This document shows positions 38,055 through 64,000 of a stretch of 64,000 nucleotides of DNA, piece by piece. The DNA is from Schmidtea nova (Eukaryota). The notes beneath the pieces were generated by a model, which was not told the DNA's origin, did not search any database, and was given only the letters and a program-made list of their open reading frames with translations. Position 1 is the first letter of the stretch, and every line of letters begins with the position of its first letter. The stretch covers positions 44,950,001-45,014,000 of the forward strand of contig CM097882.1 in assembly GCA_044892505.1 (NCBI GenBank), written 5' to 3'. The position numbers were made by a program, and so were the translations under genes.

Positions 38055-41000
38055 GATAATCATTTTAACTGTAAATTTTTCTACAAAAGTTCAAATTTAG
38101 AATTTTATAAAATATAAAAATTTCTAATATAATAATAAAATTTTTGATTTTTACATTTTAATATAATAATAGAAAATTTTAATTTATAATTTTACATTCC
38201 AACATAAGTTTTAATTTATTATTTTACATTTTAGGAAAATCTCGATTTATAATTTTTATACATTGATTTTTACATAATATAATATCTATAAAAGTATATT
38301 TTTATCTTTATAGCAAAATTTGAAATTCCATAAAATTTATACAATAATAAAATTTTTATTCACAAATTTCGTAATCTAAATAGTTCAATCTAAAAAACTT
38401 TATATTTTAAATTATTTACAAAAATAAATTATAAATTTTTACAAAACTAATTTCCATATATGGGTTTCTAAAAATAATGTACATAAAAATTCAAGCCGGT
38501 TCTTTTCGCGACTCTAATATTAAAAAATTCTTTTTGCAATTCTTAGAAGTCTTCATCAATGAGGTACACGATTTCGAGTAAAAATTCAACGATCTATTAT
38601 CGATGTTTAATCTGTAAGCATTATTCAATATACCATTTTACTACTCTTTGAGTGGTCATTTACAAGTTTTTATACGTTTCATTTTTTTCCGATCGACTTT
38701 GCGAATTCTTTCATAGTAAAGTGAAGATGACGTTTATTGAGCGAAGTCGATTGACGAAAGGAATGTCTATTTCTGATTCATTTTTATTATGTTCACATTT
38801 TTATGTAGTTGTAAGAGCTATGTGATTTAATATAAATAAAAATAACTACAATATTATAAATAATATATTCATTTGCGTCTATGAATACCATATCGCATTT
38901 CAAAAAAATGTAATAGGTTTCTAGACTTTAATTACTTTGAACAGACCTTGCGCTTGGTCAAACCACTACTCCTCATATAGCCAAGTATGAGATGAAGCGA
39001 GATAGGATGTGTGCGCCTACTTCGATGAAAATATGGATCAGAACACTGAAAGGATTCTAGCAAACTAATGATCAACCAAAGCGAATAATTATGGTACAAC
39101 GACTAGGTGGACCATCATCAGACGTATGAAAATAGTTTTAATAAAAAAAATTATAAATGTGTATAGGATAAATAAATGAATATCAATATAAACATGTTAG
39201 GTTGTGAGAAAATATGATCAAAGTAAAAATTTAAAACTTGAATAGAAAAATTATAATAATCATTACATATTTTACCATAAGATAACACTTTATCAAACAT
39301 TGAATAAAAGGAAAAAACAAATCAGAATACCAACGGCAGGGTAACATGGCATGATTTGCTAGCCTGCATAACATAAAATTCATGGTTCTTACATATTCAA
39401 ATAGTTTCTCCGCTTGGTTGGAATACGATTTCTAGAAATTTTTCGAGGGGTTCGCCTTCCGAGAATTTTCTCAAACGATTTTAAGCAAATTTATCTCTTT
39501 AAAATTTCACTGCTAAAAACGTTTCAAAATTTTAAGCACCAAAATTTCAGAAATTCTGCAAATTCGGAACTTCAGAACTGAAACCAGAATTTTGATGGCG
39601 GCATTTATACTTTCTCAAAAATCCCATTTTCGCTGAGACATCAAAACAAATTGTTCTGGAAGGAACTATCTGACTCTTGTTGGGCCAGCCAAATCGAGCA
39701 GCATCTGAAAATAATATACAATCAATAAAATAAATTGACAACAGAATAACAACAAAATAAATTACCAACACCAAAGCGTAATAAAATAGGCGGCAACATC
39801 TAAAAGAAATAGAGTATTAATAAAAACAACAAAAATCTTCATAACTCACTCATGCGAAGCAGATAAAATCGGAATATGACAGCGCGTGGGCGGATGTCAC
39901 CGAAGAGCTAAAACAAAATCAAATAAAAATTAAATCATACAAAAATAAACTTACCGCATGATTAACCAAATAAATCGGTGAGTTAAGTTAGGCAGCAAAA
40001 AGCCGACAACATGAAAAAATGAATCAAACATACACACATACTCGATGCTGATTGGCTAACCAACAACACCGGCTGAGTATAAATACTGAAGGCAAATCAG
40101 TATTCATTCAATCATTGTGAAGTCATTTTTTACTGAAGTGTAACTTGCAGTTGAGCACTGAGAACATTGTAAATCCAACTTGAAGGAAAAATAAAAGGTA
40201 ATTTGGAGTTATGTTTTGATGTATTTAAACCCTCATAATTATGTAAAAATCCATAAGGTTTTCCGGAGGCCTAACAGCCTGACGGATTCTTTGGCCTCTC
40301 AGCGCAACACACCTTATCGGTTGTGAGGTGCTGATGCGGCGGGACCATAAGTTTACTAAATACTTGATGGGGGAAAGGGGGATGCACATAGGGTATCGAG
40401 TAAGACCTAACGATCATGAACTAAATCAAGGTAGAGACGATCTAGTACCAACGCTATACATCACGATGATAGGGTATCGAGTGACAGTTGATGGTCATAA
40501 ATCAAATCAAGGTAAAGCTCATTTCGCAAGGGAGGATATATGCATGAGGTATCTTGACGAGGGGGTGTACCTTCAAGGAGTGCTAGTACATCAAAAGTCG
40601 ATGAGAATCGAGATAGGCAAAGCGTAACATCGCGGTCAAAAGACATTAGTACCAAGGGGCAGTAGTGAACCGAATGAGTTGCTAATATATACATATAACC
40701 CGCTAAGGGCATGAAAAGTCAGACCCGATAGTAGATAAAATTAGTGTGTTTCTCAACCAGGTAGTTGACTAAGGGATTACTAAACTTTCCCCGTGACGCG
40801 AACCTTGATAGTTGCTGATGATGATCTGTAAACGAACCATGTTGAATGAATGAAAATGATCGATGAGAGATTAAATGTAACGTAAAATATGATTGTAAAT
40901 AACAAGCCAAAATGAGCGTAGCTAAAACCGACTGAAATTGCGGAGTGAATCAACTCACCAAGTAAAGTCACCACCTACATGAACATCGCGACCAATGGTC

Positions 41001-41130
41001 TAGTAAATTATATACTAGCTACTAAGGCCTACGGCTAATAGAACGATAAACCAAGTAGGTTGATCGACATAAATATCGATGGTCGATGATAGAGTCTGTC
41101 AGTTAACCTAAAATTCCATTTCAGAGTGAC

Positions 41131-41766
41131 ATGATGAAAACAGAATGTCTCATGAAGGAGCCGGTAGGACCCCTAACCGTCAAATTAGAGGAGTACATTC
41201 TCCGGAGGAAACGACGCATCCGCTCCGTCATCACACCAAAAATACCTACCGAAATCCAAGGAGAGAAGGAGGCCCCACGCCAAATTTTCAACTCCGCACG
41301 TAGACACCTGCGTCGATGGACAAGGACCCATATGAGCACAGCGGCAAGTATTCCCGCCTGTGCATTCCAACTACAGCTGAGGTGGGAAGGCGATGTCGAT
41401 TGGACGCCCTCCCCGAACCCCACCAAGGATGGATACGAAAGATGGTTCTATCAATTTGTAGATGAAACACAACAACCCCGCTGGGTACTAAGCACCGGAA
41501 TGATGACCGGGCAGGCATTCGGCCAACTCGGGTATTTGCTGCTAGACAGGCCTCGGTGTGGTGACACTGGGGAAGTCTTAGTTTACCCGAGCGCCCCAGG
41601 CAGTGTTTCCGTGGATCAACCCCCCGAGCCCAAAGACCTTCGCCTCTGGGAGGTGTTCATTTATCAAAACAAACTGAGTTGGAATCCGGCCCCCGAACTA
41701 TACCATGAAACAGGGATTCGCCGAGACGAGAACCCGGCCGATCAAGAGTTAAGACCATACAATTGA
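41131..41766 (+). CDS. LTR-region ORF A, 211 aa, unknown function (basic RRKRRIR motif)
   Basis: Long GC-balanced ORF with an ATG start; TTTCAG acceptor ends 6 nt upstream; ATTAAA/AATAAA and a GT-rich tract downstream. Confidence 0.6.
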   Translation: MMKTECLMKEPVGPLTVKLEEYILRRKRRIRSVITPKIPTEIQGEKEAPRQIFNSARRHLRRWTRTHMSTAASIPACAFQLQLRWEGDVDWTPSPNPTKDGYERWFYQFVDETQQPRWVLSTGMMTGQAFGQLGYLLLDRPRCGDTGEVLVYPSAPGSVSVDQPPEPKDLRLWEVFIYQNKLSWNPAPELYHETGIRRDENPADQELRPYN

Positions 41767-41943
41767 TCACGAGGACGACACCCCAATGAACGAACACCTG
41801 TTGTAAATTAAAAATATATGTATCCATTTAAAAGGGTTTTGTTTTGGTTTTGGATGCATGTGGAATGAGTAAGGATAAGGGTGCAGTTGTTTAACAATAA
41901 AATGGTGACTGAGAAACCAAACGATACATACATACCCTAGTTA

Positions 41944-42525
41944 ATGATACATTACTCAGATATGGACGAAAATCCCAATCGAAATTACAAGCAAGAGGCA
42001 CGCGAACATAGAGCACGATCTCGTGTCCTCGAGAGTCGCTTGAGACAGCTGAATGAGGAGTACCAGCGGATTAAGGCAACATGGTTTAATCCTGAGAGGG
42101 TTAAAGCCATCTTACAAGCCCGATACAGAGCGGAGCGAACGATCGATGAACAAGCGAGAGAGGTCGCAGCCCTGAAATTAGAGTTGGCCAATTATTTAAA
42201 GGTGTCGACCCAAGATTTCATCGCTGAGCAATTGCGTCCAGTGATTAGAGCGAGTACCTTCAACAAATGGTTAAACTCGACATCAGCAACGACGAGTACG
42301 CAAACCGACAAAGAGATAATCGTAACCACGGCAACCGAGATGACCACAACCATACCACGAGGGTCGCAGAGGACAAAACGAAGGAATCGCTTGGGAGCGA
42401 AAAAGCGTAGGGAGAGGCGAGCATACGCAGATCGTCTCGGAATAGAAGTAGACTTGCTCAGTGGCCTATCTGAACAAGAACTACTAAATGTAATTAGACC
42501 CTCTGTATTGTTAAACTATAAATAA
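41944..42525 (+). CDS. LTR-region ORF B, 193 aa, coiled-coil with basic C-terminal region, unknown function
   Basis: Heptad-like N-half (LESRLRQLNEEYQRI..VAALKLELANYL), Thr-rich linker, KRRNRLGAKKRRERR; CCCTAG acceptor 3 nt before the ATG; AATAAA next to the stop. Confidence 0.6.
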   Translation: MIHYSDMDENPNRNYKQEAREHRARSRVLESRLRQLNEEYQRIKATWFNPERVKAILQARYRAERTIDEQAREVAALKLELANYLKVSTQDFIAEQLRPVIRASTFNKWLNSTSATTSTQTDKEIIVTTATEMTTTIPRGSQRTKRRNRLGAKKRRERRAYADRLGIEVDLLSGLSEQELLNVIRPSVLLNYK

Positions 42526-43471: not shown

Positions 43472-43930
43472 ATGGAGAACAAAATAAAAGAAATGCAAAC
43501 GTTTTTCGAAACAAACAATGAAACAGTGGAGACAATAACGAGAAAGTTAAAACGACTCGAAGTAGGAGAATATCATGAGCCGACAAACAACACAGAAAGA
43601 GCGGAAATGATGATGAGCATAAGTGAGAATAAGATAACAGTGGATACAGCAACACGATATCAGTGGTATAGAGAAAGATTAAACAACCCTGAGATGAATA
43701 TCGAGTGCCACAGGCTAGAACAACAGTTAACAACAAAACACGATGAGTGGATAAGAATAACAACAGAACATACGAGACAATATCTGACGTGTTACATCTG
43801 TGAAATGAACAAAATACAGATAATGTTGTTGCCATGTGGGCATTTTCGATTCTGTAATGAATGTAAAATAAATGAACGATGTCCTATGTGCAACCTTCCC
43901 GTATCCGAGAAAATAACAGTGTACTTGTAA
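43472..43930 (+). CDS. IAP-type C-terminal RING finger (C3HC4) protein without BIR domains, 152 aa
   Basis: CYICEMNKIQIMLLPCGHFRFCNECKINERCPMCNLPVSEKITVYL-stop has the spacing and extreme C-terminal position of IAP/MDM2-type RINGs; coiled-coil N-half. Confidence 0.8.
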   Translation: MENKIKEMQTFFETNNETVETITRKLKRLEVGEYHEPTNNTERAEMMMSISENKITVDTATRYQWYRERLNNPEMNIECHRLEQQLTTKHDEWIRITTEHTRQYLTCYICEMNKIQIMLLPCGHFRFCNECKINERCPMCNLPVSEKITVYL

Positions 43931-44981
43931 TAGAAATAAAGTTTTGAACAAGTGCAGTTGTTATTGAAATTATGAGGGTTTAATAATGATTTGGTAAAAA
44001 TGACCTAAGTAATTATGAGCTACTTACGAGTAGTCCGTTAAGCACCCATTTGGGGGAACCAACTGATCAACTTACCCGAGATGTGTAGAAAGGGGCCAAT
44101 CGCGGATATTGGAAAGCTCTTGTGATGTGACTGATCACCACATCGTGCATCAGTGGACCAATGCGATCTTTTTATATATTTTGGTTGGGGTGAAAGGTAG
44201 GGATAACTCAATGAGGTTTAGGCGCGTGCAGAAAAACTATAAAAATAGGATGTTAGAACTGATCAGTAAAGAGAGAGAGAAAGCAATGAAATGAGTAAGA
44301 TGAATAACGAAACGTGGTATATGATGAAAGGCACGTAATCAGCTCGCATAAGGTAAAATCAAGTAGAAAGGTTGACGAATCAATAATAGAATAAAGGGGT
44401 ATAACAGATGAACCGAGTAAATGGAAAACTCGAGGTTAAAGGAAATCCTTGAAAGAAAGGAAATGATAAAAGGGGTCCTAGAGAGAAAGGATTTGCCCAT
44501 AGTTCTTGAAAGATAGAACTTAACGAAACGCGACAATAGATTCTCCGAAGAAGCATAAGTGACCACTGGGAGGAACATCCCGAAGCAACACATGCAACCA
44601 CTGAGAGATGATATTTCGAGTTTTCGTTCGTGAGCATAGGTCTCATAGTGAGCATAGGTCTCGTCATAAAAATAACATCCTAGTGAGCATAGGTCTCGTC
44701 ATAAAACACAACATCATAGTGAGCATAGTTCTCGTCCGTAAATATAAATCTCGTAGTGAGCAGAGTTCTCATTAATAAACACAAGACCAGCGAACATAGT
44801 CCTCATCAGTGAGCGTAGTTCTCATCAACAAACATAGTCACCACAGTGAGCTTAGTTCTCATCAGGAAACATAATTCCTGTAGTCACCATCAGTGAGCAT
44901 AGTTCTCATCGGGGAACATAGTCCCCGGAGCAAAGAGTTTCCATCAGTAAGCAAAACCCTCATAACAACCATGTTTTGCCA

Positions 44982-45304
44982 GTGAGCATAGTTCTCGTCA
45001 GTGAGCATAGTTCTCGTCAGTGAGCATAGTTCTCGTCAGTGAGCATAGTTCTCGTCAGTGAGCATAGTTCTCGTCAGTGAGCATAGTTCTCGTCAGTGAG
45101 CATAGTTCTCGTCAGTGAGCATAGTTCTCGTCAGTGAGCATAGTTCTCGTCAGTGAGCATAGTTCTCGTCAGTGAGCATAGTTCTCGTCAGTGAGCATAG
45201 TTCTCGTCAGGGAGCATAGTTCTCGTCATTGAGCATAGTTTTCGTCATTGAACATAGTTCTCGTTAGTGAGCATAGTTCTCAGCGGTGAGCATAGTTCTC
45301 GTTC
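44982..45304 (+). repeat. 19-bp tandem array (GTGAGCATAGTTCTCGTCA): 12 perfect and 5 diverged copies, with degenerate spaced copies at about 44627-44930
   Basis: Counted directly from the sequence. Confidence 0.95.
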
Positions 45305-45627
45305 GAAATAAAATATTGAGTAAAAGCCCACGAGAAAGACGACGAAGTGAGGCAGATGAGGACCAAATTAAGCACAAAACTATCCGGATAGTGAAGAGCA
45401 ATAAGCGATAATGGAGATGAATAAATGATAATGAGGATAAATGATGAATAGTGAAAATGAATAGCGAATAATGAGGAATAAGGGTTGAAAGAAACCGAGG
45501 TAATAATGAGAGAGTTGAAGGTGCGCACCTGGGTATTGATAAATGCGAGTAAAGCTGATTATGTGGCCTAATGATGTTAAAGTATGCATACAGAGGAGTA
45601 GTAAAGTAAAGTGAGTAAGTGAAGGGT

Positions 45628-55400: not shown

Positions 55401-58400
55401 AGATAAAGAGAAGACAGCATTTACAATCGGACGAGATCTGTACCAATTCAAGAAAATGCCGTTTGGGTTAACAAACGCGCCAGCATCATTCCAGAGATGC
55501 ATGAATTTCGTAACACATGGCATAAAACAATGCATGGTGTACATCGACGATCTATTGATCTACTCCGCAACATTCGAGGATCACTTACAAGACATCAGAA
55601 ATGTGTTCGTGAAATTGAGACAGTGGAAACTGAAATTAAAGCCGTCAAAGTGCGATTGGGCAAAAGAAAAAGTGACATTCTTAGGTCACATTGTATCGGC
55701 AAAAGGAAAAGAACCAGATCCAAGGAATATCGAGAAAGTTAAAGAATGTCCACCACCCAAGACAGTGACTCAAATACAAGAATTTTTGGGATTGTGTGGA
55801 TATTATCGAAAGTTTATCAAGGACTACGCAGGAATATCAAAGCCAATGCAAGAATTGGTAAGACAAGATGTGTCGTTTGTATGGGGAGGAGAACAGCAAG
55901 CAGCATTTGAAACATTACGAGATAAGCTGATTACAGCACCAATACTGGTCCATCCAGATTTTAAGAAGCCATTTCTGTTGGCAACAGATGCAAGTGGATA
56001 CGCAGCAGGAGCAGTACTAGGCCAATTTGATGAAGAAGGCAAAGAGAGAGTAATCGGATATTATAGTCGAACGTTCAGGAAACATGAAAAGAATTACTCA
56101 GTCACGGAAAGAGAAGCCTATGCGATAATATTGGCAATCAAGCATTTCAAGTACCTATTGTGGGGTCATGAAATATATATCACGACGGATCATCAACCAT
56201 TGGTATGGTTAGGCCAACATAAAGAATCATCAAGTAGATTGATGCGTTGGGCGATGCAGTTGCAAGAATACTCGCCATTCATAAAGTTTAAGGCAGGAAA
56301 AGCAAATGCAAACGCAGATTGCATGTCAAGGTTTACATTTCCAGAATTGGTGAACCTAAATGCTCTAAAAATATGTGCATTAATAGCGGAAGATTTGGAT
56401 TTCAGCGAACTAAGGAAAGATCAACTCGAAGATGAGGAGTTGGGATTGATCAGCAAGTATCTGAAAGAAAGGGAAATGGAAATATTCGGCAAGAACCAAA
56501 CGTTGTGCGAACATATGCAGAAATATCAACATAGATATGTGATGGAAAAAGGATGGTTATTGATACAAGATGGAGAACGAAGATTAATGTGCTTACCTGC
56601 GAATAGACGAAAGGAAATCATGACTCAATATCACGACGGAAAATTAGGCGGACATATGTCAGCGAAAAAGACAATCGGGAGATTGAGACAAAAGTATTTT
56701 TGGCCAACCATGGAAGATGATGTGAAAGAATGGATAAAGAACTGCTTAACCTGTGCGACAAGAAAGAACGTCGGAACAAAGTGGAAAACACCACTAAAAC
56801 CTATGCCAATACCTGCAGAACCTATGGCGACGATAGCAATGGATGTAGTTGGACCATTGCCGGAAAGTTTAAAAGGAAATCAGTATATATTAGTAGTCAC
56901 GGACTATCTAACAAAGTTCCCAGAAGCATTCGCAATGCCAGATCAAAAAGCAAAAACAGTCGCGAGAATATTGGTGGAAGAAATATGCTGCAGATACGGA
57001 ACACCCAAGAAAATCCTAACGGATCAAGGAACAAATTTCATGAGTGAAATATTAGACGAAGTTACGAATTACTTCCGAATTGCGAAACTACGAACATCCC
57101 CATACCATCCACAAACGAACGGTCAAACAGAAAGATTCAATGGGACATTAATACGCATGTTGTCGAATTACGTCAGTAAACATCAGACTGACTGGGATGA
57201 ATATATAAACCTGTGTTTAATGGCATACAGAATGTCAATACATGCGGCAACAAAGCTAAGTCCATTTCAACTGATGTACGGAAGAGATTGCAACTTACCG
57301 ATCGATTTAGAATACCAACCACCATTATCACAGTACATGGAGGTTGACGATTACGTTACAAAGTTCAAAGAAAGAATGCAAGAAATCTGGAAAACAGCGG
57401 AACTGAACATCAAGTTCTATCAAGAGAGTTACAAGGATCTACATGATCAGAAAAAGAATGTGAAAGCACATGATTTAAAAGTTGGAGATTGGGTGATAAT
57501 TGAGACACCAGAGATAATACCCGGTACGGTCAAGAAACTCCAACGACCAGGCAAAGGGCCATATGAAATAACAACAGTAAATGAAAATAATGTGCGAGTA
57601 CGATTGGTGAACAATCCATTGGTAAGACCAATATACGTGAATGCATGTCGATGCAGGAAAATACCAAAGACAGCAACTGTATTACCGGAAAAACGGGTGA
57701 TGACAAGATCACAGACGGCGAGAATCAGTATGTTGCGAGTACAACAAAAGCCGCAAACAAGTCTAGAAGACAACCGAAGGGAGATAATAGACATCAAAGA
57801 ACTGGCAAAGAAAACCAGAGAAATTATACCAGAATGGAAATGGTGGTTCGATTTCAATATACTGTCAGAAGTTCGAAAGAATGTAATGGAGTATGCGAAG
57901 GATAGAACAGCGCATCCAATAACAAGAACGTTACTAGAAGAAATCCCTCAAACATTGAACCTACAGGATAAAGACGGTAACACCGCGTTGCACAATGCAA
58001 TCAAGCACGGTGGAAACGAGAAAGTGAAAGAGATTGTGGAGATGATACTTGAAGGTGGAGGAGAAATTGACAAAGTGAATTGGGAAGGAATCACTCCACT
58101 TATGATGATGACGATTCATGGAAGAAACGACGAGATAATCAAGTTATTCGGAAACACCAGATCGAATTGGATGGCAAAAGATAAAGAAGGACGAACATTC
58201 CTGAATCATGCAATTGATAGAGCGAATCACCGAATACTAAAGTATATTACGGAAAATGCCACGTGGGAAATCGATGAACTAACTAGAGGATCGATCATGA
58301 AACAAGCAATCGGGGTAAAGAACAGTAAAACCTGGAGAATACTGCTAAAGTGGAAACGACCAGAAGGAGATTCGTGGGTCGTAAATTGTAATGAAGTATT

Positions 58401-61400
58401 CACAAGGGGAGAAAATGCGTTACTGAAACATTTACTAGAGGTAACATACGATCCAAAAACACTTGCAGTGTTAATAGCGAGAGATACGCTACGGGTTAGC
58501 GAGAACCCAAGAGAATACAAGCTGGAAGACAGAAAGAAAGAATTATTCGGATTAATCAAGAGATGGTGTGATAAACAATGGAATCCGGATATGAGCTTCG
58601 AACATTTCTATGACATCCAAAAGCAGCACAAAGAAATAAGCAAGAGATATAAAGAGCTGGTGGAAGCATTGAAATATGGACAGTTCTTCAGACAAGCAGT
58701 GTATCAAGACCAACGAATGAAACAGATGCAAACGCGAATAAGAAGCAAAGCAGTGTTGTTCAATGCAAAAGCGGAATATCAAGAGAGATTAGACGCAATA
58801 GTAGCGAAAGCGCAAGAAAGATTATCGGAGTTCAAAGAGAATAAAAACTCATTGGAGATACTAGGAGCAATTACAGAGAAAGTACACAGATACGCACAAG
58901 GAGATTATAACGAGAGTGACATAGAAACGATCAAAAATCAAATGCCAGTGGCATTCCTATTATCAAAGGATGGGAGATTGCCGATACACTGGGCATTACG
59001 TCGAAAGAAAGAAAACGAAGTGCTGGAAATAACGAAAGCGATGGTCAAGTGCGAAGCAGACATGAATACGGTTGACGATAACGGAGATACAATCATGATA
59101 ATCGCAGCAAGAAAGAAGACGAAGTTGAAAGTGCTAAATGAATTATACGAAGCAGGAGCAAAAATCGAAGGGAAAAATGGAAAGAATAATTCCATCATAG
59201 ATATCGCAATACAGTGGAACAACTTCGAGATGATCAAGTTCATAAAGTCCATCAAGAGACATGAGGACATAGAATACCTGGCAAATAACGTAAAGAATTT
59301 CAGTCTAACAGTAATGATACACGACGTAGAGAAAACAAGAGCATTACTAACATGGGTGAATCCGATCACCAAGGAACCAGTGTTCAAGATCAATGACCAT
59401 ATGGAACAGAATCAGAATTGGTGTATCAGAAGCGCGTTATTAAGACACAAAAAGCCAGAGATAGTAGAAGAATTCTTGAAGAGAAGAGATTTGAAATTTA
59501 CGAACAACTCAAAGGAACAGGAACGAATAGGAAGATGGAAAGACTTGTTCAGAAAATATGTGAATGAATGGACAAATGCCAAGGAAACAATCAAGCAAAG
59601 TAGACTAAAAGACATAGAACCATCCAAGGATATGGAAATACGTGAATTCGAGTCTAGCACACTCGCGGTTCAAGCGTATGAAAGATTGATTGAAGAAATT
59701 AATGTCGAGGACGACATTTTCAAAGGACCAGGGGGTGGTTACAGAGACTTCGACGACAAAAGTAACAACGAAAAGAACAACGAAGATAACGACAACAAAA
59801 GAACGGAGAATAATGAAAAAGAAAGACAAGAAGAACCGAAGCCAACGAGAAATGACAAGAAAGGAGAAGCCGAAGAACGAGAAAACAACGGAACAAAAGA
59901 CGAACATGCGAACTATGGAAAACGAACAGGAAGTCTACTTTTGAGACCGGAAATGTTGTGTATTGCGATATTGATAACAATCATCGGACAAGGCGAAGCC
60001 AAGAAACAATACGTCACGCTGGAAATAATCAGAGGAAACGAAGTATACGAAAGAATATGCTGGAAAGAAAACCTGAAGAAAAACGATACGCTGAAATGTA
60101 TATTGTCAGACTTGAAGCGAGACGTCATCCAAATCAAAGGATTGGAGAAAGAAAAGTCATACATAATATGCGCAATAAAGCAGAGAGGAGAACCAAAAGC
60201 ACCTCAAGTAACTGCATGTCAATTATACAAAGCAACAGAAGCGCTGAATATACAGAAATGGATTGGAAAAAGAAGCGAAGAGACAACGAGAAGAACAGAA
60301 GTGGAATCGGAAAAAGGGAAGAATCAAACGGAAGCAGAAGAGGGAATCAGAAACCGAACAGAGAAAGAAAGAATAACCAAAAATCCAGCGGGCAAATTAA
60401 CATTCCAACCAGAATTGATATGTGTAGCATTAATATTAATCCTCATTAAGAGAATCATGGAGGACATAGATATCAGCGTGATGACGTTAGTAAATATCCA
60501 AGATCAACGAACAACGAACGGAAGATGTTGGGGACGAAACAATGAGGTAATTGGAATCAGCGAAACAAGAGAAAGTCGAGAGGCAGAGACAAATGAGGAA
60601 ATCGAGATAACTGAAATGGAAACAGAGAAAACATGTGAACTATGCCTCATGGAAAAAGCAGCAAACGGAAACAGACCAGGAACAAGCGAGTGTAAAGTGT
60701 TCCAAGCAAAGGAGATAATTGAGTTCCCAAAAAGAAAGAAACAAGATCAAGAAACGATTGCGAATGAAGTAGTAACAGTAGAGATAAAAAACATTGGTCG
60801 GAGAACAATTGGGATGTGTTGGAGAAAATACATCGGAGTACCGACCAACAACATAATACCGCAATGCAGAACGAGAGAACGAGGAATCCCGTTTCAACTA
60901 AATGGATTCGAAGTCGGACAAGCATATGAAATTTGTGTAATCCGAAGAATAAGAGAAATAATACAAAGAAGCCTGGAGTGCAAACTGTACAAGACGCCAG
61001 AGCAAATTAACGGAACAAGAACGATTGAAATGGGAGGAAGTCGACAGAGGAAAAGAAAGTCAAAAAGAACCACGACAACAAACAGTCAAGGAACTCAACA
61101 GGCAACAACAGAAAGGACGACAATAGAAAACGAACCGGAATCAACAACGCTGATAATATGGAAGATCCATAAAAAGGTCCTAGAAATCTGTTGGACACTA
61201 ATGCCGAACAGTATGGGAAAGTCCCCACGAAACTGTCAAAAGACATCAAATGATAAAGGAGAAATAATCGAGGTAGAAATGAGGAAGTTGAAAACAAACG
61301 CAGAATACGAAGTGTGTGCAATCGAAGAAGTGGATGCACAAGGAAATCCACAAGAAAGGTGCGAAACCTATTACACGCCGATAAAGAGGAGAATCAAAAA

Positions 61401-61866
61401 GTTAGAATTCCGAGAATTGAGTCAGAAGAGAGAACAAAACGAGAAGGAAGAAACAATACCAAATCAACAAGAAAAATGGGAACCAGAGAAAGTGATCGAA
61501 GAAGTCAGACGGAGACAACAACAATACGAACAATGGGAAGCAGAATGGAAAGGTCAATATGGCGTGATGATAAACCAAAGTGAAACTCCGAAGATGAGCA
61601 TTGGGAAAACAATAATGGGATTAATCAGCATGGGAGTATTCATAGGGTGTATACCACTGATAACGATCATGATAGTATGTTGGAGATATGGCATGAGAAA
61701 TAAGACCATAGCAGTAAAATGGCCGGACGTAAAGGTCACGAATTACAACATAAAACTACCAAAAGAAGTACGAGAAGAACTGAAAAGACGATCAAAACAC
61801 GAAGAGATGTGGGTACAGATCGAGGACGAGGAACTGTTCGAAGGAAAACCAGTGATAGTTGTATAG
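52369..61866 (+). CDS. pol: Polyprotein segment 3 (3165 aa): rest of glycoprotein with TM, protease, RT, RNase H, integrase, ankyrin repeats, 4 FN3-like repeats, TM
   Basis: DTGA at 54325; YIDD at 55540; TDAS RNase H near 55985; HHCC finger 56629-56757; D-D-E motifs MDVVGP, TDQGTNF, GQTERFN; DKDGNTALHNA ankyrin near 57970; TM segments at about 53614-53715 and 61612-61683. Confidence 0.95.
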   Translation: MELPATNLVVMDTYIVELKSYEAFFEPTTGEMKTLSMCKIDRSMCQTGMSTLVYKPKVNECQLQLLQGAKFDEIQGKTFQEEDDDDKARAKHLKEALENKRQLRPDHREKRIEMRTTPTVLITTNQDVGMRFIKGKATLKCSTTVYETNYPGIYVSKQELPNAKPKIDTMDIKLHLYVNNKMDFLFHRGQASLQKVYYDLINNDCILNREILKTKLAVAITNPDSAMPLLPLREGHFGRVVGEAMYVYICEKTHASLAATTQLKPGQCTNELEVHYKGKVRYVQPVTRIINPPGFEPNPFNCSNAYGPLYQKPDGKWVMFPGRTEVLAPREFELMQLSKDRQFSDVDVSNNGIYSPKDLEAARQNILFPARREALLSNIVTITGGTNYREGPNYELLLSPAHFKKATENMMKAMWGRFLIFGQMMAGILGVILIIQIVRVILTQMLACFDIYKREKKVNWKMVVGFLPFLAKTMVLHGHSKDIHRIKRLLKILAKMKGTNEDVGRKFKKIMQDEQARRQLKKERKGLWERVRGYRTQDDSSNDDDDDDDRGGQANINQIPQYAEKSAVENWRYSAPPQSMYNKPIYKAKPNMMQMMPMTSIYPIIPEGCKVKRGKSVDSLEDTHTIAVMSTNMGPILTTTIEINRKEIEAMIDTGANISAIDINYIPEKNQGEIEKTNVHVIACSQETVEVAGRWFVKIKHRGAEINTYIAVIPSLSVPCIIGTDLMPDLFKEIVIDLGAMKLKDRTGKICRMKVKVASAEQIVVPARHELMCYVKIDSTIKGDMVFEPSKKFEAKKELPMARELVTINQEGEIPINLVNFDEEDKIIYENERLGKLTPMSEIEIPDKNEKSKDELPWTIDSVLLDERQKEQLQKLLMEYKDIFAASDLDLGTCDVTLHTIPLTDETPIALRPYKLAEAQKAVAEEEVQKMLDAEVIEPSCSPWQFPVVMVKKKDGTQRFCIDYRRLNAVTKRDTYPLPDINEMLLTLQGAAYFTSLDLKSGYWQIKMKDEDKEKTAFTIGRDLYQFKKMPFGLTNAPASFQRCMNFVTHGIKQCMVYIDDLLIYSATFEDHLQDIRNVFVKLRQWKLKLKPSKCDWAKEKVTFLGHIVSAKGKEPDPRNIEKVKECPPPKTVTQIQEFLGLCGYYRKFIKDYAGISKPMQELVRQDVSFVWGGEQQAAFETLRDKLITAPILVHPDFKKPFLLATDASGYAAGAVLGQFDEEGKERVIGYYSRTFRKHEKNYSVTEREAYAIILAIKHFKYLLWGHEIYITTDHQPLVWLGQHKESSSRLMRWAMQLQEYSPFIKFKAGKANANADCMSRFTFPELVNLNALKICALIAEDLDFSELRKDQLEDEELGLISKYLKEREMEIFGKNQTLCEHMQKYQHRYVMEKGWLLIQDGERRLMCLPANRRKEIMTQYHDGKLGGHMSAKKTIGRLRQKYFWPTMEDDVKEWIKNCLTCATRKNVGTKWKTPLKPMPIPAEPMATIAMDVVGPLPESLKGNQYILVVTDYLTKFPEAFAMPDQKAKTVARILVEEICCRYGTPKKILTDQGTNFMSEILDEVTNYFRIAKLRTSPYHPQTNGQTERFNGTLIRMLSNYVSKHQTDWDEYINLCLMAYRMSIHAATKLSPFQLMYGRDCNLPIDLEYQPPLSQYMEVDDYVTKFKERMQEIWKTAELNIKFYQESYKDLHDQKKNVKAHDLKVGDWVIIETPEIIPGTVKKLQRPGKGPYEITTVNENNVRVRLVNNPLVRPIYVNACRCRKIPKTATVLPEKRVMTRSQTARISMLRVQQKPQTSLEDNRREIIDIKELAKKTREIIPEWKWWFDFNILSEVRKNVMEYAKDRTAHPITRTLLEEIPQTLNLQDKDGNTALHNAIKHGGNEKVKEIVEMILEGGGEIDKVNWEGITPLMMMTIHGRNDEIIKLFGNTRSNWMAKDKEGRTFLNHAIDRANHRILKYITENATWEIDELTRGSIMKQAIGVKNSKTWRILLKWKRPEGDSWVVNCNEVFTRGENALLKHLLEVTYDPKTLAVLIARDTLRVSENPREYKLEDRKKELFGLIKRWCDKQWNPDMSFEHFYDIQKQHKEISKRYKELVEALKYGQFFRQAVYQDQRMKQMQTRIRSKAVLFNAKAEYQERLDAIVAKAQERLSEFKENKNSLEILGAITEKVHRYAQGDYNESDIETIKNQMPVAFLLSKDGRLPIHWALRRKKENEVLEITKAMVKCEADMNTVDDNGDTIMIIAARKKTKLKVLNELYEAGAKIEGKNGKNNSIIDIAIQWNNFEMIKFIKSIKRHEDIEYLANNVKNFSLTVMIHDVEKTRALLTWVNPITKEPVFKINDHMEQNQNWCIRSALLRHKKPEIVEEFLKRRDLKFTNNSKEQERIGRWKDLFRKYVNEWTNAKETIKQSRLKDIEPSKDMEIREFESSTLAVQAYERLIEEINVEDDIFKGPGGGYRDFDDKSNNEKNNEDNDNKRTENNEKERQEEPKPTRNDKKGEAEERENNGTKDEHANYGKRTGSLLLRPEMLCIAILITIIGQGEAKKQYVTLEIIRGNEVYERICWKENLKKNDTLKCILSDLKRDVIQIKGLEKEKSYIICAIKQRGEPKAPQVTACQLYKATEALNIQKWIGKRSEETTRRTEVESEKGKNQTEAEEGIRNRTEKERITKNPAGKLTFQPELICVALILILIKRIMEDIDISVMTLVNIQDQRTTNGRCWGRNNEVIGISETRESREAETNEEIEITEMETEKTCELCLMEKAANGNRPGTSECKVFQAKEIIEFPKRKKQDQETIANEVVTVEIKNIGRRTIGMCWRKYIGVPTNNIIPQCRTRERGIPFQLNGFEVGQAYEICVIRRIREIIQRSLECKLYKTPEQINGTRTIEMGGSRQRKRKSKRTTTTNSQGTQQATTERTTIENEPESTTLIIWKIHKKVLEICWTLMPNSMGKSPRNCQKTSNDKGEIIEVEMRKLKTNAEYEVCAIEEVDAQGNPQERCETYYTPIKRRIKKLEFRELSQKREQNEKEETIPNQQEKWEPEKVIEEVRRRQQQYEQWEAEWKGQYGVMINQSETPKMSIGKTIMGLISMGVFIGCIPLITIMIVCWRYGMRNKTIAVKWPDVKVTNYNIKLPKEVREELKRRSKHEEMWVQIEDEELFEGKPVIVV

Positions 61867-61989: not shown

Positions 61990-62340
61990 ATGAACCAAGA
62001 AAATATCGAGATGTCAATGATGACAAGATGGAAAGTGCAATGTGACCTGCTAGCCAGAACAGTAAATGAATTACAGAGCCAGTTGACGGCCAAAACGCAA
62101 TTATTAACCGAGAGTTATAACTGTAATTTCGAAGCAATGAACAAAATCGAGATCCAACAAATACAGATAAACGAATTACAGAACGAGAACCGAACATTAA
62201 ATGAAGTGAACAACTGGCAAGCAGAGGAAATTGATCGATTAACGAGACATGAAGAGGAGGAGATACCGGATAGTTGGACGAGCTGGATTGTAAATGAAAT
62301 AGACGTGTATCCAGAGCCAGATTCAACTGAGGATGTATAG
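61990..62340 (+). CDS. 3' accessory ORF, 116 aa, coiled-coil with acidic Trp-containing tail, unknown function
   Basis: ATG-started ORF in the element's A-rich codon style; heptad pattern; CTAG acceptor 8 nt upstream; AATAAA at 62373. Confidence 0.65.
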   Translation: MNQENIEMSMMTRWKVQCDLLARTVNELQSQLTAKTQLLTESYNCNFEAMNKIEIQQIQINELQNENRTLNEVNNWQAEEIDRLTRHEEEEIPDSWTSWIVNEIDVYPEPDSTEDV

Positions 62341-62429
62341 TGAATAAGCGGAAAACTGTGTAAATACGTGTAAATAAAGAACCAGAAAAATCAAAAATAT
62401 GGGGAAATTGATGTAAATATTGTTGTAGA

Positions 62430-63842
62430 ATGAGAGCAGAAAGCGAAGCAGATTACCAAACCATCGAGATTCTAAGAAGAGAAAATCGACAGTGGGGAGT
62501 AAATGTGACGTGTGTAAAGTGTAAAAATCTACTGTTAAAACCGAGGCAAACGGAATGTGGATGCAGGATGTGAACCAAGTGTATATTGCAAATAATCAGT
62601 GAAAGTGAGACAAGAAAGTGTCCAGAGTGTGACGATAAACTACTGATCAACGAGACAAAACCAGATAAAGCAATACAAAAGGAGATCTGGAAGATAAAAA
62701 CAGAGTGTATAAACCAACCATGCGAATGGAAAGAACAAATAATCGAGCTAAGACAACATCTGGAGAAATGTGAAAACAAGAAAGCGATATGTGAAAAGTG
62801 TCAACAGACGATAACCATCAAGCAGTCGAAAAAGCACAAGGATGAGTGCAAAGCAGAGATAATAGAGTGTCAATACTGCGAACAAAGAGAGACGAGAGAA
62901 GTAATTGAAACAGAACATCTCAACGTAGCAGAAGAGAAAGTGTGTGGAAAATTCAGAGGAATTTGTCCAAGTAATTGCGGAGCCGGAGAAGAAGTGATGT
63001 TGAGAGAACATTGGGAACAATGCGAATCAAGACCAAGGAAGTGCGTATGGAGTAAACAAGGATGTTTAGTAAAGAAAACGAGCAAAGACATGAAAGAGCA
63101 TTTAGAAACAGAGACAGTACAACACGCAGAGATACTAACAGAAAATTTAAACGGAATGGAACAAACCATACAGAAGCTGGGAAAAGAAATCGAATCTCAG
63201 AGGATAATGACCGAGTTATTACTGGAAACGAGAGAACAATTCGAGCTCACCAGAGAAAAAATGATGGAGAAAATCAAAGTCATAGAGACATTGGTAAAAG
63301 AAGTAAACGTGCGACATCAAATGTGGATACGAGATACAGAGGATATCGAGAGTTTACCTGTTGCGCCATATGTATGGAAAATCAAGAACTTCAACGAAAA
63401 GTTCACAACAGCAAAAGCAGGAAGTCAAGTATTGGTAACAAGTCCACCATTTTATCTGTGGAAAAATGGATACAAAGTTCGAATGAGAATTTATCCAAAT
63501 GGAGATGGATCAGGAAAGGAAACGCATGTGTCATTATTCTTTGCGTTGTGTAAAGGGGGTTACGACGACATATTAGAATGGCCGCTAGAGACAAAGGCGA
63601 TAATGAGAGTGAAAAACTCGAGAGAAACGATTGTGAGAATATTCAAAATTGATGGTAAGCACGAAGCTTACAAAAGACCAACCACAGAATGTTCATTAGC
63701 GACTGGAGAACCAAAATTCATACCACACCAAACAATGTGGGAGATGTTGTACGACGACAACTTATATGTAGAGTTGGAGATCGAAAAGAAAACAAGTACA
63801 ACAGTGATGAACACGAAGTCAACGAAAGGATGGTTGGAGTAG
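62430..63842 (+). CDS. TRAF-family protein (RING - TRAF zinc fingers - coiled coil - MATH) with an in-frame TGA at 62571-62573
   Basis: From ATG 62430: CVKCKNLLLKPRQTECGCRM*TKC...CPEC RING, CxNxxCxW...LxxHLxxC zinc fingers, and MATH motifs YVWKIKNF, SPPFY..KNGYKVRMRIYPNGDGSGKETHVSLFF..KG.YD.IL.WP. Confidence 0.9.
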
Positions 63843-63931
63843 TCAGAGTGAACGACCCTGTAAATAAAGTGTAAAAATCGACGACAACAATAAACATATA
63901 GTATAACAAGTGTAAATTTGTAAATTACAGA

Positions 63932-64000
63932 ATGGAAAACGTAAACGAACATGTAATCGAAGATGAAACGAGAAACGAGATGTCAAACGAACAAGAAGCA
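63932..64000 (+). CDS. Further accessory ORF, truncated by the window end
   Basis: MENVNEHVIEDETRNEMSNEQEA..., open to the end, preceded by a TTACAG acceptor like the other accessory ORFs. Confidence 0.5.
   Translation, partial: MENVNEHVIEDETRNEMSNEQEA

What the first reader, a model, noticed from the sequence alone, without database searches (positions are those of the whole stretch)
40383..64000. Giant virus-like Gypsy retroelement carrying a coordinated apoptosis/NF-kB/ubiquitin toolkit plus an envelope
One element of over 23 kb encodes an IAP-type RING, two ubiquitin-like domains, a Bcl-2 fold, ankyrin repeats, a full-architecture TRAF, an FN3 membrane protein and a class III-type fusogen around a standard Gypsy core. 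Bcl-2, IAP, ankyrin and TRAF-pathway modulators are the host-control functions typical of large DNA viruses (pox-, herpes-, baculoviruses), not of Metaviridae. The set suggests an infectious retroelement that manipulates cell death and innate signalling (inference). I recall planarian Burro elements being described as ~30 kb Gypsy elements with BCL2-like, MATH and ankyrin domains, so the family may be known. The fusogen, the FN3 protein and the expression layout are the parts I do not recall being described. Only four visible lesions over about 18 kb of coding sequence suggest a recent insertion.
Basis: partly seen in the sequence, partly recalled or inferred. Interest (0 to 1): 0.92.

Follow-up and report, generated by a model that had tools for sequence, protein, structure and literature searches.

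The report
Burro-type giant planarian Gypsy retroelement copy
This is a real but broken and truncated copy of a giant Ty3/Gypsy endogenous retrovirus-like element of the already published planarian 'Burro' kind, so most of what looked new, including the envelope gene between gag and pol, is already in print.

Summary
The object is real. From about 40.2 kb to the window end the DNA switches from 27% GC host sequence to a 40% GC, purine-rich + strand. It carries one reading frame of about 4,960 codons, broken twice. The frame reads Gag with three CCHC knuckles, an accessory region, a Monjiviricetes-type fusion glycoprotein, PR, RT, RNase H, IN, two ankyrin clusters and a cysteine-rich membrane-anchored tail. 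Small ORFs flank it: two orphans and an IAP-type RING upstream; a coiled coil and a TRAF (RING, zf-TRAF, MATH; one stop) downstream. Tools confirmed the Gypsy core, fusogen, ankyrins, RING and TRAF. They did not confirm the ubiquitin-like domains or the Bcl-2 fold, and gave only weak hints for FN3. The 5' boundary, LTRs and insertion age cannot be tested, because only one end lies in the window and no other copy could be retrieved. The literature settles novelty. Burro/GYPSM1 elements of Schmidtea mediterranea were described with gag, MATH/TRAF, SUMO-like, BCL2-like, in-frame env, pol, BIR, ankyrin, accessory ORFs and tandem repeats (PMC6431247). GAG-ENV-POL flatworm elements with class III env appear in PMC13524379. 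What may remain undescribed: the FN3-like tail, TRAF as a separate 3' ORF, and a six-hairpin array in the leader. Interest is low to moderate.

The parts
39600..40382 (+). It is already A-rich (AT skew 0.24, GC 0.36), unlike the host. It contains an inverted CCAAT, a TATAAATA at 40078 and an AATAAA at 40190. It may be element or LTR sequence, or the tail of a neighbouring copy.
40369..40382 (+). 14-nt purine run directly before the TG at 40383. It looks like a polypurine tract, which normally precedes a 3' LTR.
   Evidence: sequence read directly
40383..41130 (+). Non-coding 5' block. The LTR end and PBS were not identified.
41131..41766 (+). Upstream ORF u1: 211 aa, Pro/Arg-rich, GC 0.53 unlike the rest of the element, no family match.
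41944..42525 (+). Upstream ORF u2: 193 aa, coiled-coil-like with a basic stretch, no family match.
43472..43930 (+). Intact 152-aa ORF with a coiled-coil-like N part and an IAP-type C3HC4 RING at the extreme C terminus (domain 43784-43912). It has no BIR.
44090..44270 (+). Core-promoter-like module read by eye: two CCAAT boxes, TATAAAAATA at 44238 and TCAGT about 25 nt downstream.
   Evidence: not statistically tested
44646..45321 (+). Tandem array: 17 near-identical 19-nt units flanked by degenerate 35-37-nt variants.
45625..46095 (+). Six spaced copies (spacing about 84-99 nt) of a conserved 10-bp hairpin with compensatory changes in its three outer pairs. They lie in the leader before gag.
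46968..61866 (+). Giant polyprotein gene of about 4,960 codons: gag, accessory region, env, PR, RT, RH, IN, ankyrin, membrane tail. It is broken by one in-frame stop and one frameshift.
47685..47840 (+). Three CCHC zinc knuckles (nucleocapsid).
48048..48400 (+). Highly charged Glu/Lys/Gln-rich stretch (53-65% E/K/Q/R), likely coiled coil or disordered. It may correspond to the 'Smc' motif noted for GYPSM1.
   Evidence: PMC6431247
48411..48670 (+). Candidate ubiquitin-like (beta-grasp) stretch 1, seen by eye only.
   Evidence: no database support
49704..49964 (+). Candidate ubiquitin-like stretch 2, seen by eye only; 23% identical to stretch 1.
   Evidence: no database support
51297..51776 (+). 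All-helical region directly before env, ending in a Gly-Gly-Trp motif. It sits where Burro has its BCL2-like domain. The fold is not verified.
   Evidence: PMC6431247
51888..53715 (+). env: Met-rich hydrophobic signal or anchor stretch, then a fusion-glycoprotein ectodomain (PF24664, profile 4-164 and 242-575), then a TM anchor at 53638-53694.
54286..54555 (+). Retroviral-type aspartyl protease.
55219..56271 (+). Reverse transcriptase (55219-55695) and RNase H (55882-56271).
56596..57165 (+). Integrase: H2C2 zinc-binding domain and catalytic core. Similarity to the Ty3 polyprotein continues to about 57609.
57847..59247 (+). Two ankyrin-repeat clusters (57847-58290 and 58972-59247) in frame after integrase.
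59953..61866 (+). C-terminal membrane tail. A Met-initiated signal-like stretch (59953-59985) is followed by four Cys-containing beta modules of about 95 aa (59992-61419). A second signal-like stretch lies after module 1. Then come a TM (61597-61689), a 58-aa tail and the stop. FN3/Ig-like is not proven.
61990..62340 (+). Downstream 116-aa coiled-coil ORF with no family match.
62430..63842 (+). TRAF gene with its own ATG: RING (62511-62631), TRAF zinc finger (62925-63089), coiled coil, MATH/TRAF-C (63357-63770). It is broken by one in-frame stop.

Best explanation
WHAT IT IS
A 5'-proximal copy, at least 23.6 kb and cut by the window end, of a Burro-type giant Ty3/Gypsy endogenous retrovirus-like element. 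It sits in AT-rich DNA, probably that of a dugesiid planarian.

SHOWN
- One gene of about 4,960 codons strings together Gag and nucleocapsid, an accessory region, a Monjiviricetes-type fusion glycoprotein with its own hydrophobic leader and TM anchor, PR, RT, RNase H, IN, two ankyrin clusters and a cysteine-rich tail with a C-terminal TM.
- Separate small ORFs encode an IAP-type RING E3 domain upstream and a TRAF (RING, zf-TRAF, coiled coil, MATH) downstream.
- This copy carries three breaks, so it cannot express the full set as it stands.

INFERRED: REPLICATION AND EXPRESSION
- The family replicates like any Ty3/Gypsy element, with Gag particles, PR processing, reverse transcription and integration.
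- The two ectodomains each begin with a Met-initiated signal-like stretch and end in a TM. They could be threaded into the ER from within the polyprotein while Gag, Pol and ankyrin stay cytosolic, as in a flavivirus-like topology. Alternatively they could be translated from subgenomic or spliced RNAs starting at those Mets.

INFERRED: ACCESSORY FUNCTIONS
- The RING, the TRAF, the ankyrin clusters and the putative Ubl and Bcl-2-like parts would act on host ubiquitination, TRAF signalling and cell death, keeping producing cells alive or quiet.
- The 19-nt tandem array and the six-hairpin array in the leader are candidate cis elements, for example protein-binding sites or RNA packaging and dimerisation signals.
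For: - Composition: the block differs from host DNA, and apart from the first upstream ORF its genes share one composition, the small ORFs included.
- Gypsy core: Pfam and Ty3 structure matches (E 9e-118).
- One frame: G (C-terminal two thirds), PR, RT, RH, IN, ankyrin and the tail share one uninterrupted frame of more than 3,100 codons.
- Fusogen: PF24664 at E 3e-53 and 1e-16, collinear, with a TM after it.
- RING: the best ten PDB hits are all IAP RINGs.
- TRAF: matches to TRAF1/2/3/5 MATH and to the TRAF6 RING and zinc fingers.
- Tail: four alignable Cys modules between signal-like and TM stretches.
- Hairpin array: 98% of cells paired, with three pairs showing compensatory changes.
- Agreement with published Burro (PMC6431247): ORF1 of 4,873-5,140 aa, three CCHC knuckles in S. 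mediterranea, env in frame between a BCL2-like region and PR with hits to mononegavirus glycoproteins, and ankyrin.
- The same paper also lists MATH_TRAF, which can be inside ORF1 or a separate ORF, further accessory ORFs and tandem repeats.
- BURRO1 is transcribed and held down by SMEDWI-2 piRNAs (PMC8532177).
Against: - No nucleotide or protein comparison with any named Burro record was possible. The protein databases and contig collections returned no close relative.
- Features reported for Burro1/GYPSM1 were not found here: BIR; dUTPase between PR and RT; MATH inside ORF1.
- The Ubl and Bcl-2-like domains were not detectable with my tools.
- The host species was not identified.
- LTRs, PBS and target-site duplication were not seen. 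Whether the upstream ORFs lie in an LTR, between LTR and gag, or outside the element is open.
- The topology and expression model is pure inference.
Confidence: 0.82

Rival explanations
1. It is an independent, so far undescribed lineage of giant env-carrying Gypsy elements, from a planarian or another flatworm. It resembles Burro only in general architecture and acquired its TRAF, RING and membrane tail separately.
For: - The layout differs from the two published layouts. Here MATH/TRAF is a separate ORF 3' of pol, whereas it is inside ORF1 in Burro1 and upstream of ORF1 in the Dugesia (Girardia) tigrina element.
- No BIR and no dUTPase were detected.
- The tail has no relative among 1.84 billion representative proteins.
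Against: - The shared combination is too specific for convergence: three CCHC knuckles, an ORF1 of about 5,000 codons, a mononegavirus-type env in frame between a helical region and PR, ankyrin after IN, TRAF/MATH, RING, and tandem repeats.
- Burro-2, -3 and -4 exist, and I could not read their layouts.
Confidence: 0.12
2. It is an ordinary Gypsy element that happens to lie next to host genes (RING, TRAF, membrane protein), or it is a chimeric assembly. On this reading the 'toolkit' is not part of the element.
For: - The second LTR is not in the window, so containment of the flanking small ORFs (u1, u2, RING, coiled coil, TRAF) within paired LTRs is untested.
- u1 has a deviant GC of 0.53.
- Giant repeats are a known assembly problem in planarians (PMC11410931).
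Against: - The ankyrin clusters, the membrane tail, env and the accessory region are in the same reading frame as Gag and Pol.
- The RING and TRAF ORFs share the element's strand, its purine skew and its 36-40% GC. The host is at 27% GC with no skew.
- No introns are visible.
- No N gap lies inside 39.6-64 kb.
- The same domain set is published for Burro.
Confidence: 0.04
3. One reading: this is a currently infectious retrovirus-like agent that actively controls apoptosis and NF-kB signalling, and this copy is a very recent insertion.
For: - A near full-length fusogen with leader and TM.
- Long open frames with only three breaks in about 17 kb of coding sequence.
- BURRO1 is described as abundant and active and is transcribed in differentiated tissues (PMC8532177).
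- The provirus hypothesis has been voiced in PMC6431247.
Against: - This copy has breaks in the polyprotein gene, one of them in the env part, and in TRAF.
- Its age cannot be estimated without the second LTR.
- There is no evidence here or in the papers read for particles, cell-to-cell transfer or any effect on cell death.
- The Bcl-2 and Ubl assignments are unverified in this copy.
Confidence: 0.15

Closest known systems
Burro elements (Burro-1 to -4; Burro1 = GYPSM1) of Schmidtea mediterranea and the Burro-like element of Dugesia (Girardia) tigrina (Jurka 2007; Grohme et al. 2018; Arkhipova & Yushenova 2019, PMC6431247)
   Same: - Giant Gypsy element with an internal region above 20 kb.
- One polyprotein of about 5,000 aa.
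- Gag with three CCHC knuckles.
- A charged coiled-coil ('Smc') stretch.
- env with mononegavirus-glycoprotein similarity, in frame between a helical (BCL2-like) region and PR.
- PR-RT-RH-IN, with ankyrin repeats after IN.
- MATH/TRAF and RING-type ubiquitin-ligase motifs.
- Accessory ORFs and tandem repeats.
   Different: - TRAF is a separate ORF 3' of the polyprotein. It is inside ORF1 in Burro1 and in an upstream ORF in D. tigrina.
- No BIR and no dUTPase were detected.
- An IAP-type RING stands alone in a small upstream ORF.
- A cysteine-rich FN3-like membrane tail ends the polyprotein. The text I could read does not mention one.
- Sequence identity to the named families was not testable.
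GAG-ENV-POL 'errantivirus'-type Ty3/gypsy elements with HSV gB-type class III ENV in Nematoda, Bryozoa and Platyhelminthes (PMC13524379)
   Same: - env lies between gag and pol in a flatworm Gypsy element.
- The fusogen is of a viral, non-retroviral type.
   Different: - Those elements were screened with LTRs no more than 14 kb apart and with separate ORFs.
- Here env is fused in frame and the element is at least 23.6 kb with many extra domains.
- The class III fold was not shown for this copy. The only support is a Pfam PF24664 match; there is no PDB sequence hit to gB, G or GP64.
Drosophila gypsy and other insect errantiviruses
   Same: - A Ty3/Gypsy core plus a captured viral fusogen.
- Repeated sequence motifs in the leader upstream of gag. 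From my own knowledge, gypsy carries an array of Su(Hw) binding sites there.
   Different: - Their env is an F-type (baculovirus F-like) protein.
- It lies 3' of pol and is made from a spliced RNA.
- They have no host-signalling domains and are about 7 kb long.
Cellular TRAF and IAP proteins, and their captured homologues in large DNA viruses
   Same: - TRAF: RING, TRAF zinc fingers, coiled coil and MATH, with E about 1e-26 to TRAF1/2/3/5.
- RING ORF: its best PDB matches are cIAP and XIAP RINGs.
   Different: - They are carried by a retroelement.
- The RING protein lacks BIR, so it is not an IAP.
- The TRAF gene of this copy holds a stop.

Membership tests
Ty3/Gypsy (Metaviridae) LTR retroelement | Pol domain order PR-RT-RNase H-IN, with Ty3-like RT and IN | tested here: met
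   Pfam RVP, RVT_1, RT_RNaseH, Integrase_H2C2 and rve occur in that order. Ty3 Gag-Pol 7q5b matches at E 9e-118 over 838 residues.
Ty3/Gypsy (Metaviridae) LTR retroelement | Gag with nucleocapsid zinc knuckles upstream of Pol | tested here: met
   Three CCHC knuckles by Pfam zf-CCHC and retroviral NC PDB hits. The capsid (Retrotrans_gag) part was not detected by Pfam at E up to 1.
Ty3/Gypsy (Metaviridae) LTR retroelement | Paired LTRs, PBS, PPT and target-site duplication | not testable with these tools
   The element runs off the window. There is no internal or upstream repeat of the 5' block. No tRNA gene in the window could be used to derive a PBS. Only a purine run before the TG at 40383 was seen.
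Burro / GYPSM1 giant planarian Gypsy elements | Internal region far above normal size, with a single polyprotein of about 4,900-5,100 aa | tested here: met
   At least 23.6 kb of element. The polyprotein gene is about 4,960 codons with two breaks. Published values are 4,873 and 5,140 aa.
Burro / GYPSM1 giant planarian Gypsy elements | env in frame between gag and pol, similar to mononegavirus fusion glycoproteins | tested here: met
   PF24664 Monjiviricetes_fusion at E 3e-53 and 1e-16, located before PR in the polyprotein gene.
Burro / GYPSM1 giant planarian Gypsy elements | MATH_TRAF_C domain | tested here: met
   MATH_2 at E 1e-26 and TRAF PDB hits. Here it is a separate 3' ORF, a position not described in the text I read.
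Burro / GYPSM1 giant planarian Gypsy elements | Ankyrin repeats | tested here: met
   Ank_2 at E 1e-18; two clusters after IN.
Burro / GYPSM1 giant planarian Gypsy elements | Ubi2/SUMO-like and BCL2-like domains between gag and env | tested here: inconclusive
   Candidate stretches lie at the expected positions. There is no Pfam or PDB hit. The AF2 model is poor, and no Bcl-2 protein is among the 50 Foldseek matches listed. The published assignments came from HHpred, which I do not have.
Burro / GYPSM1 giant planarian Gypsy elements | BIR domain, and a dUTPase between PR and RT | tested here: not met
   No BIR or dUTPase match at Pfam E up to 10 in the relevant pieces. Only an IAP-type RING was found. 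These features were reported for Burro1/GYPSM1 and need not hold for every Burro family.
Burro / GYPSM1 giant planarian Gypsy elements | Sequence relatedness to deposited Burro-1 to -4; dugesiid planarian host | not testable with these tools
   No Burro sequence is reachable. All protein and contig searches came back empty or returned only generic Gypsy pol at 46% identity or less.
Class III viral fusion proteins (rhabdovirus G / herpesvirus gB / GP64) | Class III fold: internal bipartite fusion loops, central helix, five-domain ectodomain | not tested
   Only Pfam family membership (PF24664) is established. PDB phmmer finds no G, gB or GP64. The ectodomain is split by a frameshift, so I did not model it. 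Class III is inferred from what PMC13524379 says of chuvirus-like and flatworm element ENV.
TRAF family | RING, TRAF zinc fingers, coiled coil and C-terminal MATH | tested here: met
   One in-frame stop interrupts the gene.
IAP family | At least one BIR domain (a C-terminal RING is optional) | tested here: not met
   The RING matches IAP RINGs. No BIR was found in the ORF or in the pieces of the element scanned. The ORF is IAP-RING-like, not an IAP.
Fibronectin type III domain proteins | Seven-stranded beta sandwich recognisable by profile or fold | tested here: inconclusive
   No Pfam fn3 hit at E up to 10 and no PDB profile hit. The 4-sequence AF2 model has pLDDT 49. The Foldseek top list is rich in FN3 domains, but the best E is 0.18 and TM is below 0.5.

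The most novel reading that the evidence does not exclude
The C-terminal, cysteine-rich, FN3/Ig-like type I membrane module fused after Pol-ankyrin may be a second surface glycoprotein of the element that has not been described, for example an attachment or adhesion partner for the G-type fusogen. Together with the Met-initiated internal signal stretches, Burro-type elements would then make two ER-threaded ectodomains from one retroelement polyprotein, or from dedicated subgenomic RNAs. No Metaviridae member is known to be organised this way. The six-hairpin leader array would be a family-specific RNA signal.
Probability: 0.2. Interest if true: 0.6.

Novelty: already known. Interest (0 to 1): 0.3.

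Why it matters
Burro-type elements are the largest known LTR retroelements. They are the clearest case of a retrotransposon that has gathered host-control genes and a viral fusogen, and they shape planarian genomes and their assembly.

This copy adds no new kind of system. It does give a concrete, coordinate-level anatomy:
- the leader repeats and hairpins;
- the internal signal and TM stretches that bracket two ectodomains;
- a stand-alone IAP-type RING;
- a complete TRAF as a 3' ORF.

If the FN3-like tail and the hairpin array prove conserved across copies, they would be worthwhile additions to the published description. They would also sharpen the question of how a polyprotein of about 5,000 aa with two membrane-inserted segments is expressed.

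Tried and rejected
SEARCHES FOR OTHER COPIES OR RELATIVES (ALL EMPTY OR GENERIC)
- BLASTN and TBLASTX of the element against the first 40 kb of the window, and against itself.
- The search for homologous proteins on TRAF, on the polyprotein tail and on the Bcl-2-like region.
- The look-up of encoding contigs on the TRAF and RING ORFs.
- phmmer of the tail against 1.84 billion representatives.
- Viral contigs searched with the G part.
- Metagenome contigs searched with RT-RH gave 37 ordinary Gypsy loci at 46% identity or less. None has G, ankyrin, TRAF, RING or the tail.

DOMAIN TESTS THAT LED NOWHERE
- Pfam at E up to 10 on all unexplained pieces.
- PDB phmmer on the Bcl-2-like and Ubl-like stretches.
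- PDB profile searches with small alignments of internal paralogues.
- Two AlphaFold models without real alignments (pLDDT 52.6 and 49.4), followed by Foldseek.

OTHER NEGATIVE OR UNAVAILABLE RESULTS
- Rfam and tRNA scans were negative.
- The bacterial promoter and terminator scan is irrelevant here.
- Grohme et al. 2018 is not held.
- No supplements with probes or PBS tables are held.

CONSIDERED AND REJECTED
- Programmed read-through or frameshifting for the two polyprotein breaks. They do not sit at a gag-pol type junction, and published intact ORF1s are continuous.
- Host-gene adjacency and nested insertion. There is a single RT/IN, one frame and uniform composition.

- One note names the domain in which a stop lies. 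The places of breaks can be inferred from these. I noticed this afterwards, deleted nothing and do not repeat the places here.

HUMAN-SKIN METAGENOME CONTIG
Locus L001 comes from a human-skin metagenome. It encodes an ordinary Gypsy gag-pol and I do not take it for human. It took part only in one batch tblastn and was not pursued.

Full report
1. WHAT IS IN THE SEQUENCE

The first 40 kb of the window are AT-rich (GC 0.27, no strand skew) and hold five N runs, which I left alone.

Between about 39.6 and 40.25 kb the composition changes. From there to base 64000 the + strand has GC near 0.40 and is strongly purine-rich. The RING ORF, gag, env, pol, the ankyrin region, the tail, the coiled-coil ORF and TRAF share these values (GC 0.36-0.42, AT skew 0.29-0.47, GC skew 0.15-0.27). 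The first upstream ORF is the exception, with GC 0.53.

Nothing in the first 40 kb resembles the element at DNA or protein level. The element has no long internal repeat that could be a second LTR. It runs off the window.

2. ANATOMY ON THE + STRAND

In 5' to 3' order:
- A non-coding block with a short direct repeat.
- Two orphan ORFs of 211 and 193 aa.
- An intact 152-aa ORF whose C-terminal 45 residues are a RING.
- A promoter-like module (two CCAAT, TATAAAAATA, TCAGT), read by eye only.
- A tandem array of 17 near-identical 19-nt units with degenerate flanks.
- Six spaced copies of a conserved hairpin.
- The giant gene from the gag ATG at 46968 to the stop at 61866.
- A 116-aa coiled-coil ORF.
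- A TRAF gene that starts with its own ATG at 62430 and ends 158 nt before the window end.

The giant gene contains, in order:
- Gag with three CCHC knuckles.
- A very charged stretch.
- About 1,100 codons without database matches.
- A Met-rich hydrophobic stretch.
- A fusion-glycoprotein ectodomain and a strong TM.
- PR, RT, RNase H and IN.
- Two ankyrin clusters.
- A tail of about 640 residues that starts with a Met-initiated signal-like stretch, holds four alignable modules with four cysteines each, and ends with a TM and a 58-residue tail.

3. STATE OF THE GENES

The polyprotein gene has one in-frame stop and one frameshift, the latter in its env part. The TRAF gene has one in-frame stop. 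The RING ORF, the two upstream ORFs and the coiled-coil ORF are open from ATG to stop.

With a single copy and no reads I cannot say whether any of them is an assembly error.

The stretch from the C-terminal two thirds of the fusogen through PR, RT, RH, IN, ankyrin and the tail is one uninterrupted frame of more than 3,100 codons. This excludes the idea that these parts are unrelated neighbours.

Confirmed:
- Gypsy core: Ty3 polyprotein, E 9e-118.
- Fusogen: PF24664 Monjiviricetes_fusion at 3e-53 and 1e-16, collinear over profile positions 4-164 and 242-575 of 653.
- Ankyrin.
- IAP-type RING: zf-C3HC4_3 at 3e-9. The ten best solved structures are all cIAP1, cIAP2, ML-IAP or XIAP RINGs.
- TRAF with full architecture: MATH matches TRAF5/2/1/3 at about 1e-26. 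The zinc fingers match TRAF6 residues 45-145 at 4e-9. The first RING half and an ATG lie upstream in frame.

Not confirmed:
- Ubiquitin-like domains. Two to three beta-grasp-like stretches can be read by eye, and two of them are 23% identical. There is no hit in Pfam or PDB.
- Bcl-2 fold. The helical region just before env is predicted as 8-11 helices at pLDDT 52.6. No Bcl-2 protein is among the 50 Foldseek matches listed, and there is no sequence hit.
- FN3. Pfam and the PDB profile search are negative. The model has pLDDT 49. Most of the Foldseek list consists of FN3 domains, but E is 0.18 or higher.

Also absent:
- BIR, at Pfam E up to 1 in the pieces scanned.
- dUTPase, at Pfam E up to 10.

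'Class III' was not tested structurally. PDB sequence search finds no G, gB or GP64, and I did not model an ectodomain that is split by a frameshift.

5. BOUNDARIES

That looks like a polypurine-tract/LTR junction, which is the signature of a 3' LTR rather than a 5' LTR. Element-like composition begins some 150-750 nt earlier.

Two TATA-containing promoter-like sites exist, near 40.08 kb and, with the better architecture, near 44.24 kb. If the latter is the LTR promoter, the LTR would be about 4 kb long and would contain the two orphan ORFs and the RING ORF in its U3. That would fit the published total and internal lengths of Burro. This is conjecture: no PBS was identified and there is no second LTR to compare.

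So whether the flanking ORFs lie inside paired LTRs cannot be decided from the window. Composition and strand argue that they belong to the element.

6. RELATIVES

Every attempt to fetch another copy or a close relative failed:
- Three word-indexed protein searches.
- An exhaustive phmmer of the tail against 1.84 billion representatives, with zero hits.
- Two exact look-ups.
- Viral contigs.
- Metagenome contigs, which gave 37 ordinary Gypsy loci at 46% RT identity or less, without any of the extra genes.

The collections at hand evidently hold no close relative of this element.

7. WHAT IS KNOWN

Arkhipova & Yushenova 2019 (PMC6431247, section 7) summarise Jurka 2007 and Grohme et al. 2018 and add their own HHpred work:
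- Burro elements of Schmidtea mediterranea have internal regions up to 25 kb and occur in thousands of copies.
- Burro1 (= GYPSM1) has a 4,873-aa ORF1 with Gag, three CCHC knuckles, 'AIR1' and 'Smc' motifs, MATH_TRAF_C, a Ubi2/SUMO-like domain and a BCL2-like domain.
[quoted passage not shown] - In the Dugesia tigrina relative, MATH_TRAF is an upstream accessory ORF.
- The authors already propose integrated proviruses that tinker with apoptosis and ubiquitination.

Other papers:
- PMC13524379 describes GAG-ENV-POL Gypsy elements with gB-type class III ENV in Platyhelminthes, Nematoda and Bryozoa. Its LTR screen (LTRs no more than 14 kb apart) would have missed Burro-sized elements.
- PMC8532177 shows BURRO1 RNA in intestine and its control by SMEDWI-2.

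The window's element matches this description in size, polyprotein length, knuckle number, position and type of env, ankyrin, TRAF/MATH, RING, accessory ORFs and tandem repeats. I therefore file it as a Burro-type element.

It differs from the two layouts described in words:
- TRAF is a separate ORF 3' of pol.
- No BIR or dUTPase was found.
- The RING stands alone.

It is more likely another Burro family (Burro-2, -3 or -4, whose layouts I could not read) than Burro1 itself.

8. HOW IT PROBABLY WORKS

Shown: the coding capacity listed above.

Established for the superfamily: Gag assembles particles, PR cuts the polyprotein, RT/RH copy the RNA and IN inserts the DNA.

Inferred for the membrane parts:
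- Both ectodomains are bracketed by a short Met-initiated hydrophobic stretch and a TM.
- Either they are threaded into the ER from within the polyprotein, with Gag, Pol and ankyrin left on the cytosolic face, or they are made from subgenomic or spliced RNAs that start at those Mets.
- A short pyrimidine run plus AG lies just before the tail's Met. None is obvious before env.
- The second signal-like stretch after the first tail module fits a duplicated [signal-module] unit better than a polytopic protein.

Inferred for the accessory parts:
- The RING ORF is a ubiquitin-ligase module.
- TRAF is an adaptor or ligase of TNF-receptor/Toll-type signalling.
- The ankyrin clusters are protein-binding scaffolds.
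- Together with the putative Ubl and Bcl-2-like parts, they would bias ubiquitination, signalling and survival of the producing cell. None of this has been tested anywhere, as far as I could read.

9. SIDE FINDING

The leader between the 19-nt array and gag holds six copies of a hairpin: a 10-bp stem with two bulges and a purine-rich loop. Folding gives -10.5 to -12.7 kcal/mol, with z from -2.3 to -4.6 for the five copies folded. Five copies match the core at two mismatches or fewer against 0.02 expected by chance, and the sixth appears in the alignment.

In the alignment 98% of cells are paired. The three outer pairs change on both sides (GC/AU, GC/AU/GU, CG/UA/UG), against 12-45% pairing when the partners are slid. 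Six paralogous repeats are few and related, so this is suggestive only. It is a candidate RNA signal or protein-binding site.

10. VERDICT

The family and its most striking features (toolkit plus in-frame envelope) are already published.

Possible residual novelty:
- The FN3-like membrane tail.
- The stand-alone IAP-type RING and the 3' TRAF ORF.
- The internal signal stretches.
- The leader hairpins.

Each of these needs comparison with other copies before it counts. Interest 0.3.

11. RULES AND SLIPS

Queries ended at breaks.
- I declare this as a slip and have deleted nothing.
- Short motifs recalled from memory during reasoning were not used in any tool.
- L001 stems from a human-skin metagenome, is not taken for human, and was not pursued.

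Noticed in passing
window 45625-46095: Six spaced copies of a conserved hairpin lie in the leader before gag. It has a 10-bp stem and a purine-rich loop, and its three outer pairs show compensatory changes. Five copies match the core at two mismatches or fewer, against 0.02 expected by chance.
   Followed up: partly
window 44646-45321: A tandem array of 17 nearly identical 19-nt units is flanked by older, degenerate 35-37-nt variants of the same motif. Its position is reminiscent of the binding-site arrays in the leaders of insect gypsy elements (own knowledge).
   Followed up: no
window 44090-44270: A promoter-like module (two CCAAT boxes, TATAAAAATA, TCAGT about 25 nt downstream) lies between the RING ORF and the tandem array. 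An AATAAA follows the RING ORF stop directly at 43935. Read by eye only; AATAAA is frequent in this A-rich strand.
   Followed up: partly
The 780 nt upstream are already A-rich and GC-richer than the host. This suggests either a longer LTR or the remnant of a neighbouring copy sharing an LTR.
   Followed up: partly
window 41131-41766: The first upstream ORF (211 aa, Pro/Arg-rich) has GC 0.53 and no GC skew, unlike every other part of the element (GC 0.36-0.46). It has no family match, and its origin is unexplained.
   Followed up: no
window 59929-59985 and 60391-60447: Two similar hydrophobic signal-like stretches occur in the tail, the first starting with Met, each followed by a Cys-containing module. 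This looks like a duplicated [signal + module] unit.
   Followed up: partly
window 43113-43196: A short purine-rich degenerate repeat (units of 18-23 nt) lies between the second upstream ORF and the RING ORF.
   Followed up: no
window 1024-1161, 12600-12732, 28282-28621, 28809-29141, 29836-29994: Five N runs lie in the host part of the window. They were left as they are, and none is inside the element.
   Followed up: no
window 24270-24959 (- strand): The only long ORF in the host part (229 aa, in a local GC bump of 0.34) has no Pfam match.
   Followed up: partly
L001 and L002 (metagenome contigs): These are the closest RT relatives found, at 45-46% identity. They are ordinary gag-pol Gypsy elements without env or extra domains. 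L001 comes from a human-skin metagenome; I do not take it for human and did not pursue it.
   Followed up: partly
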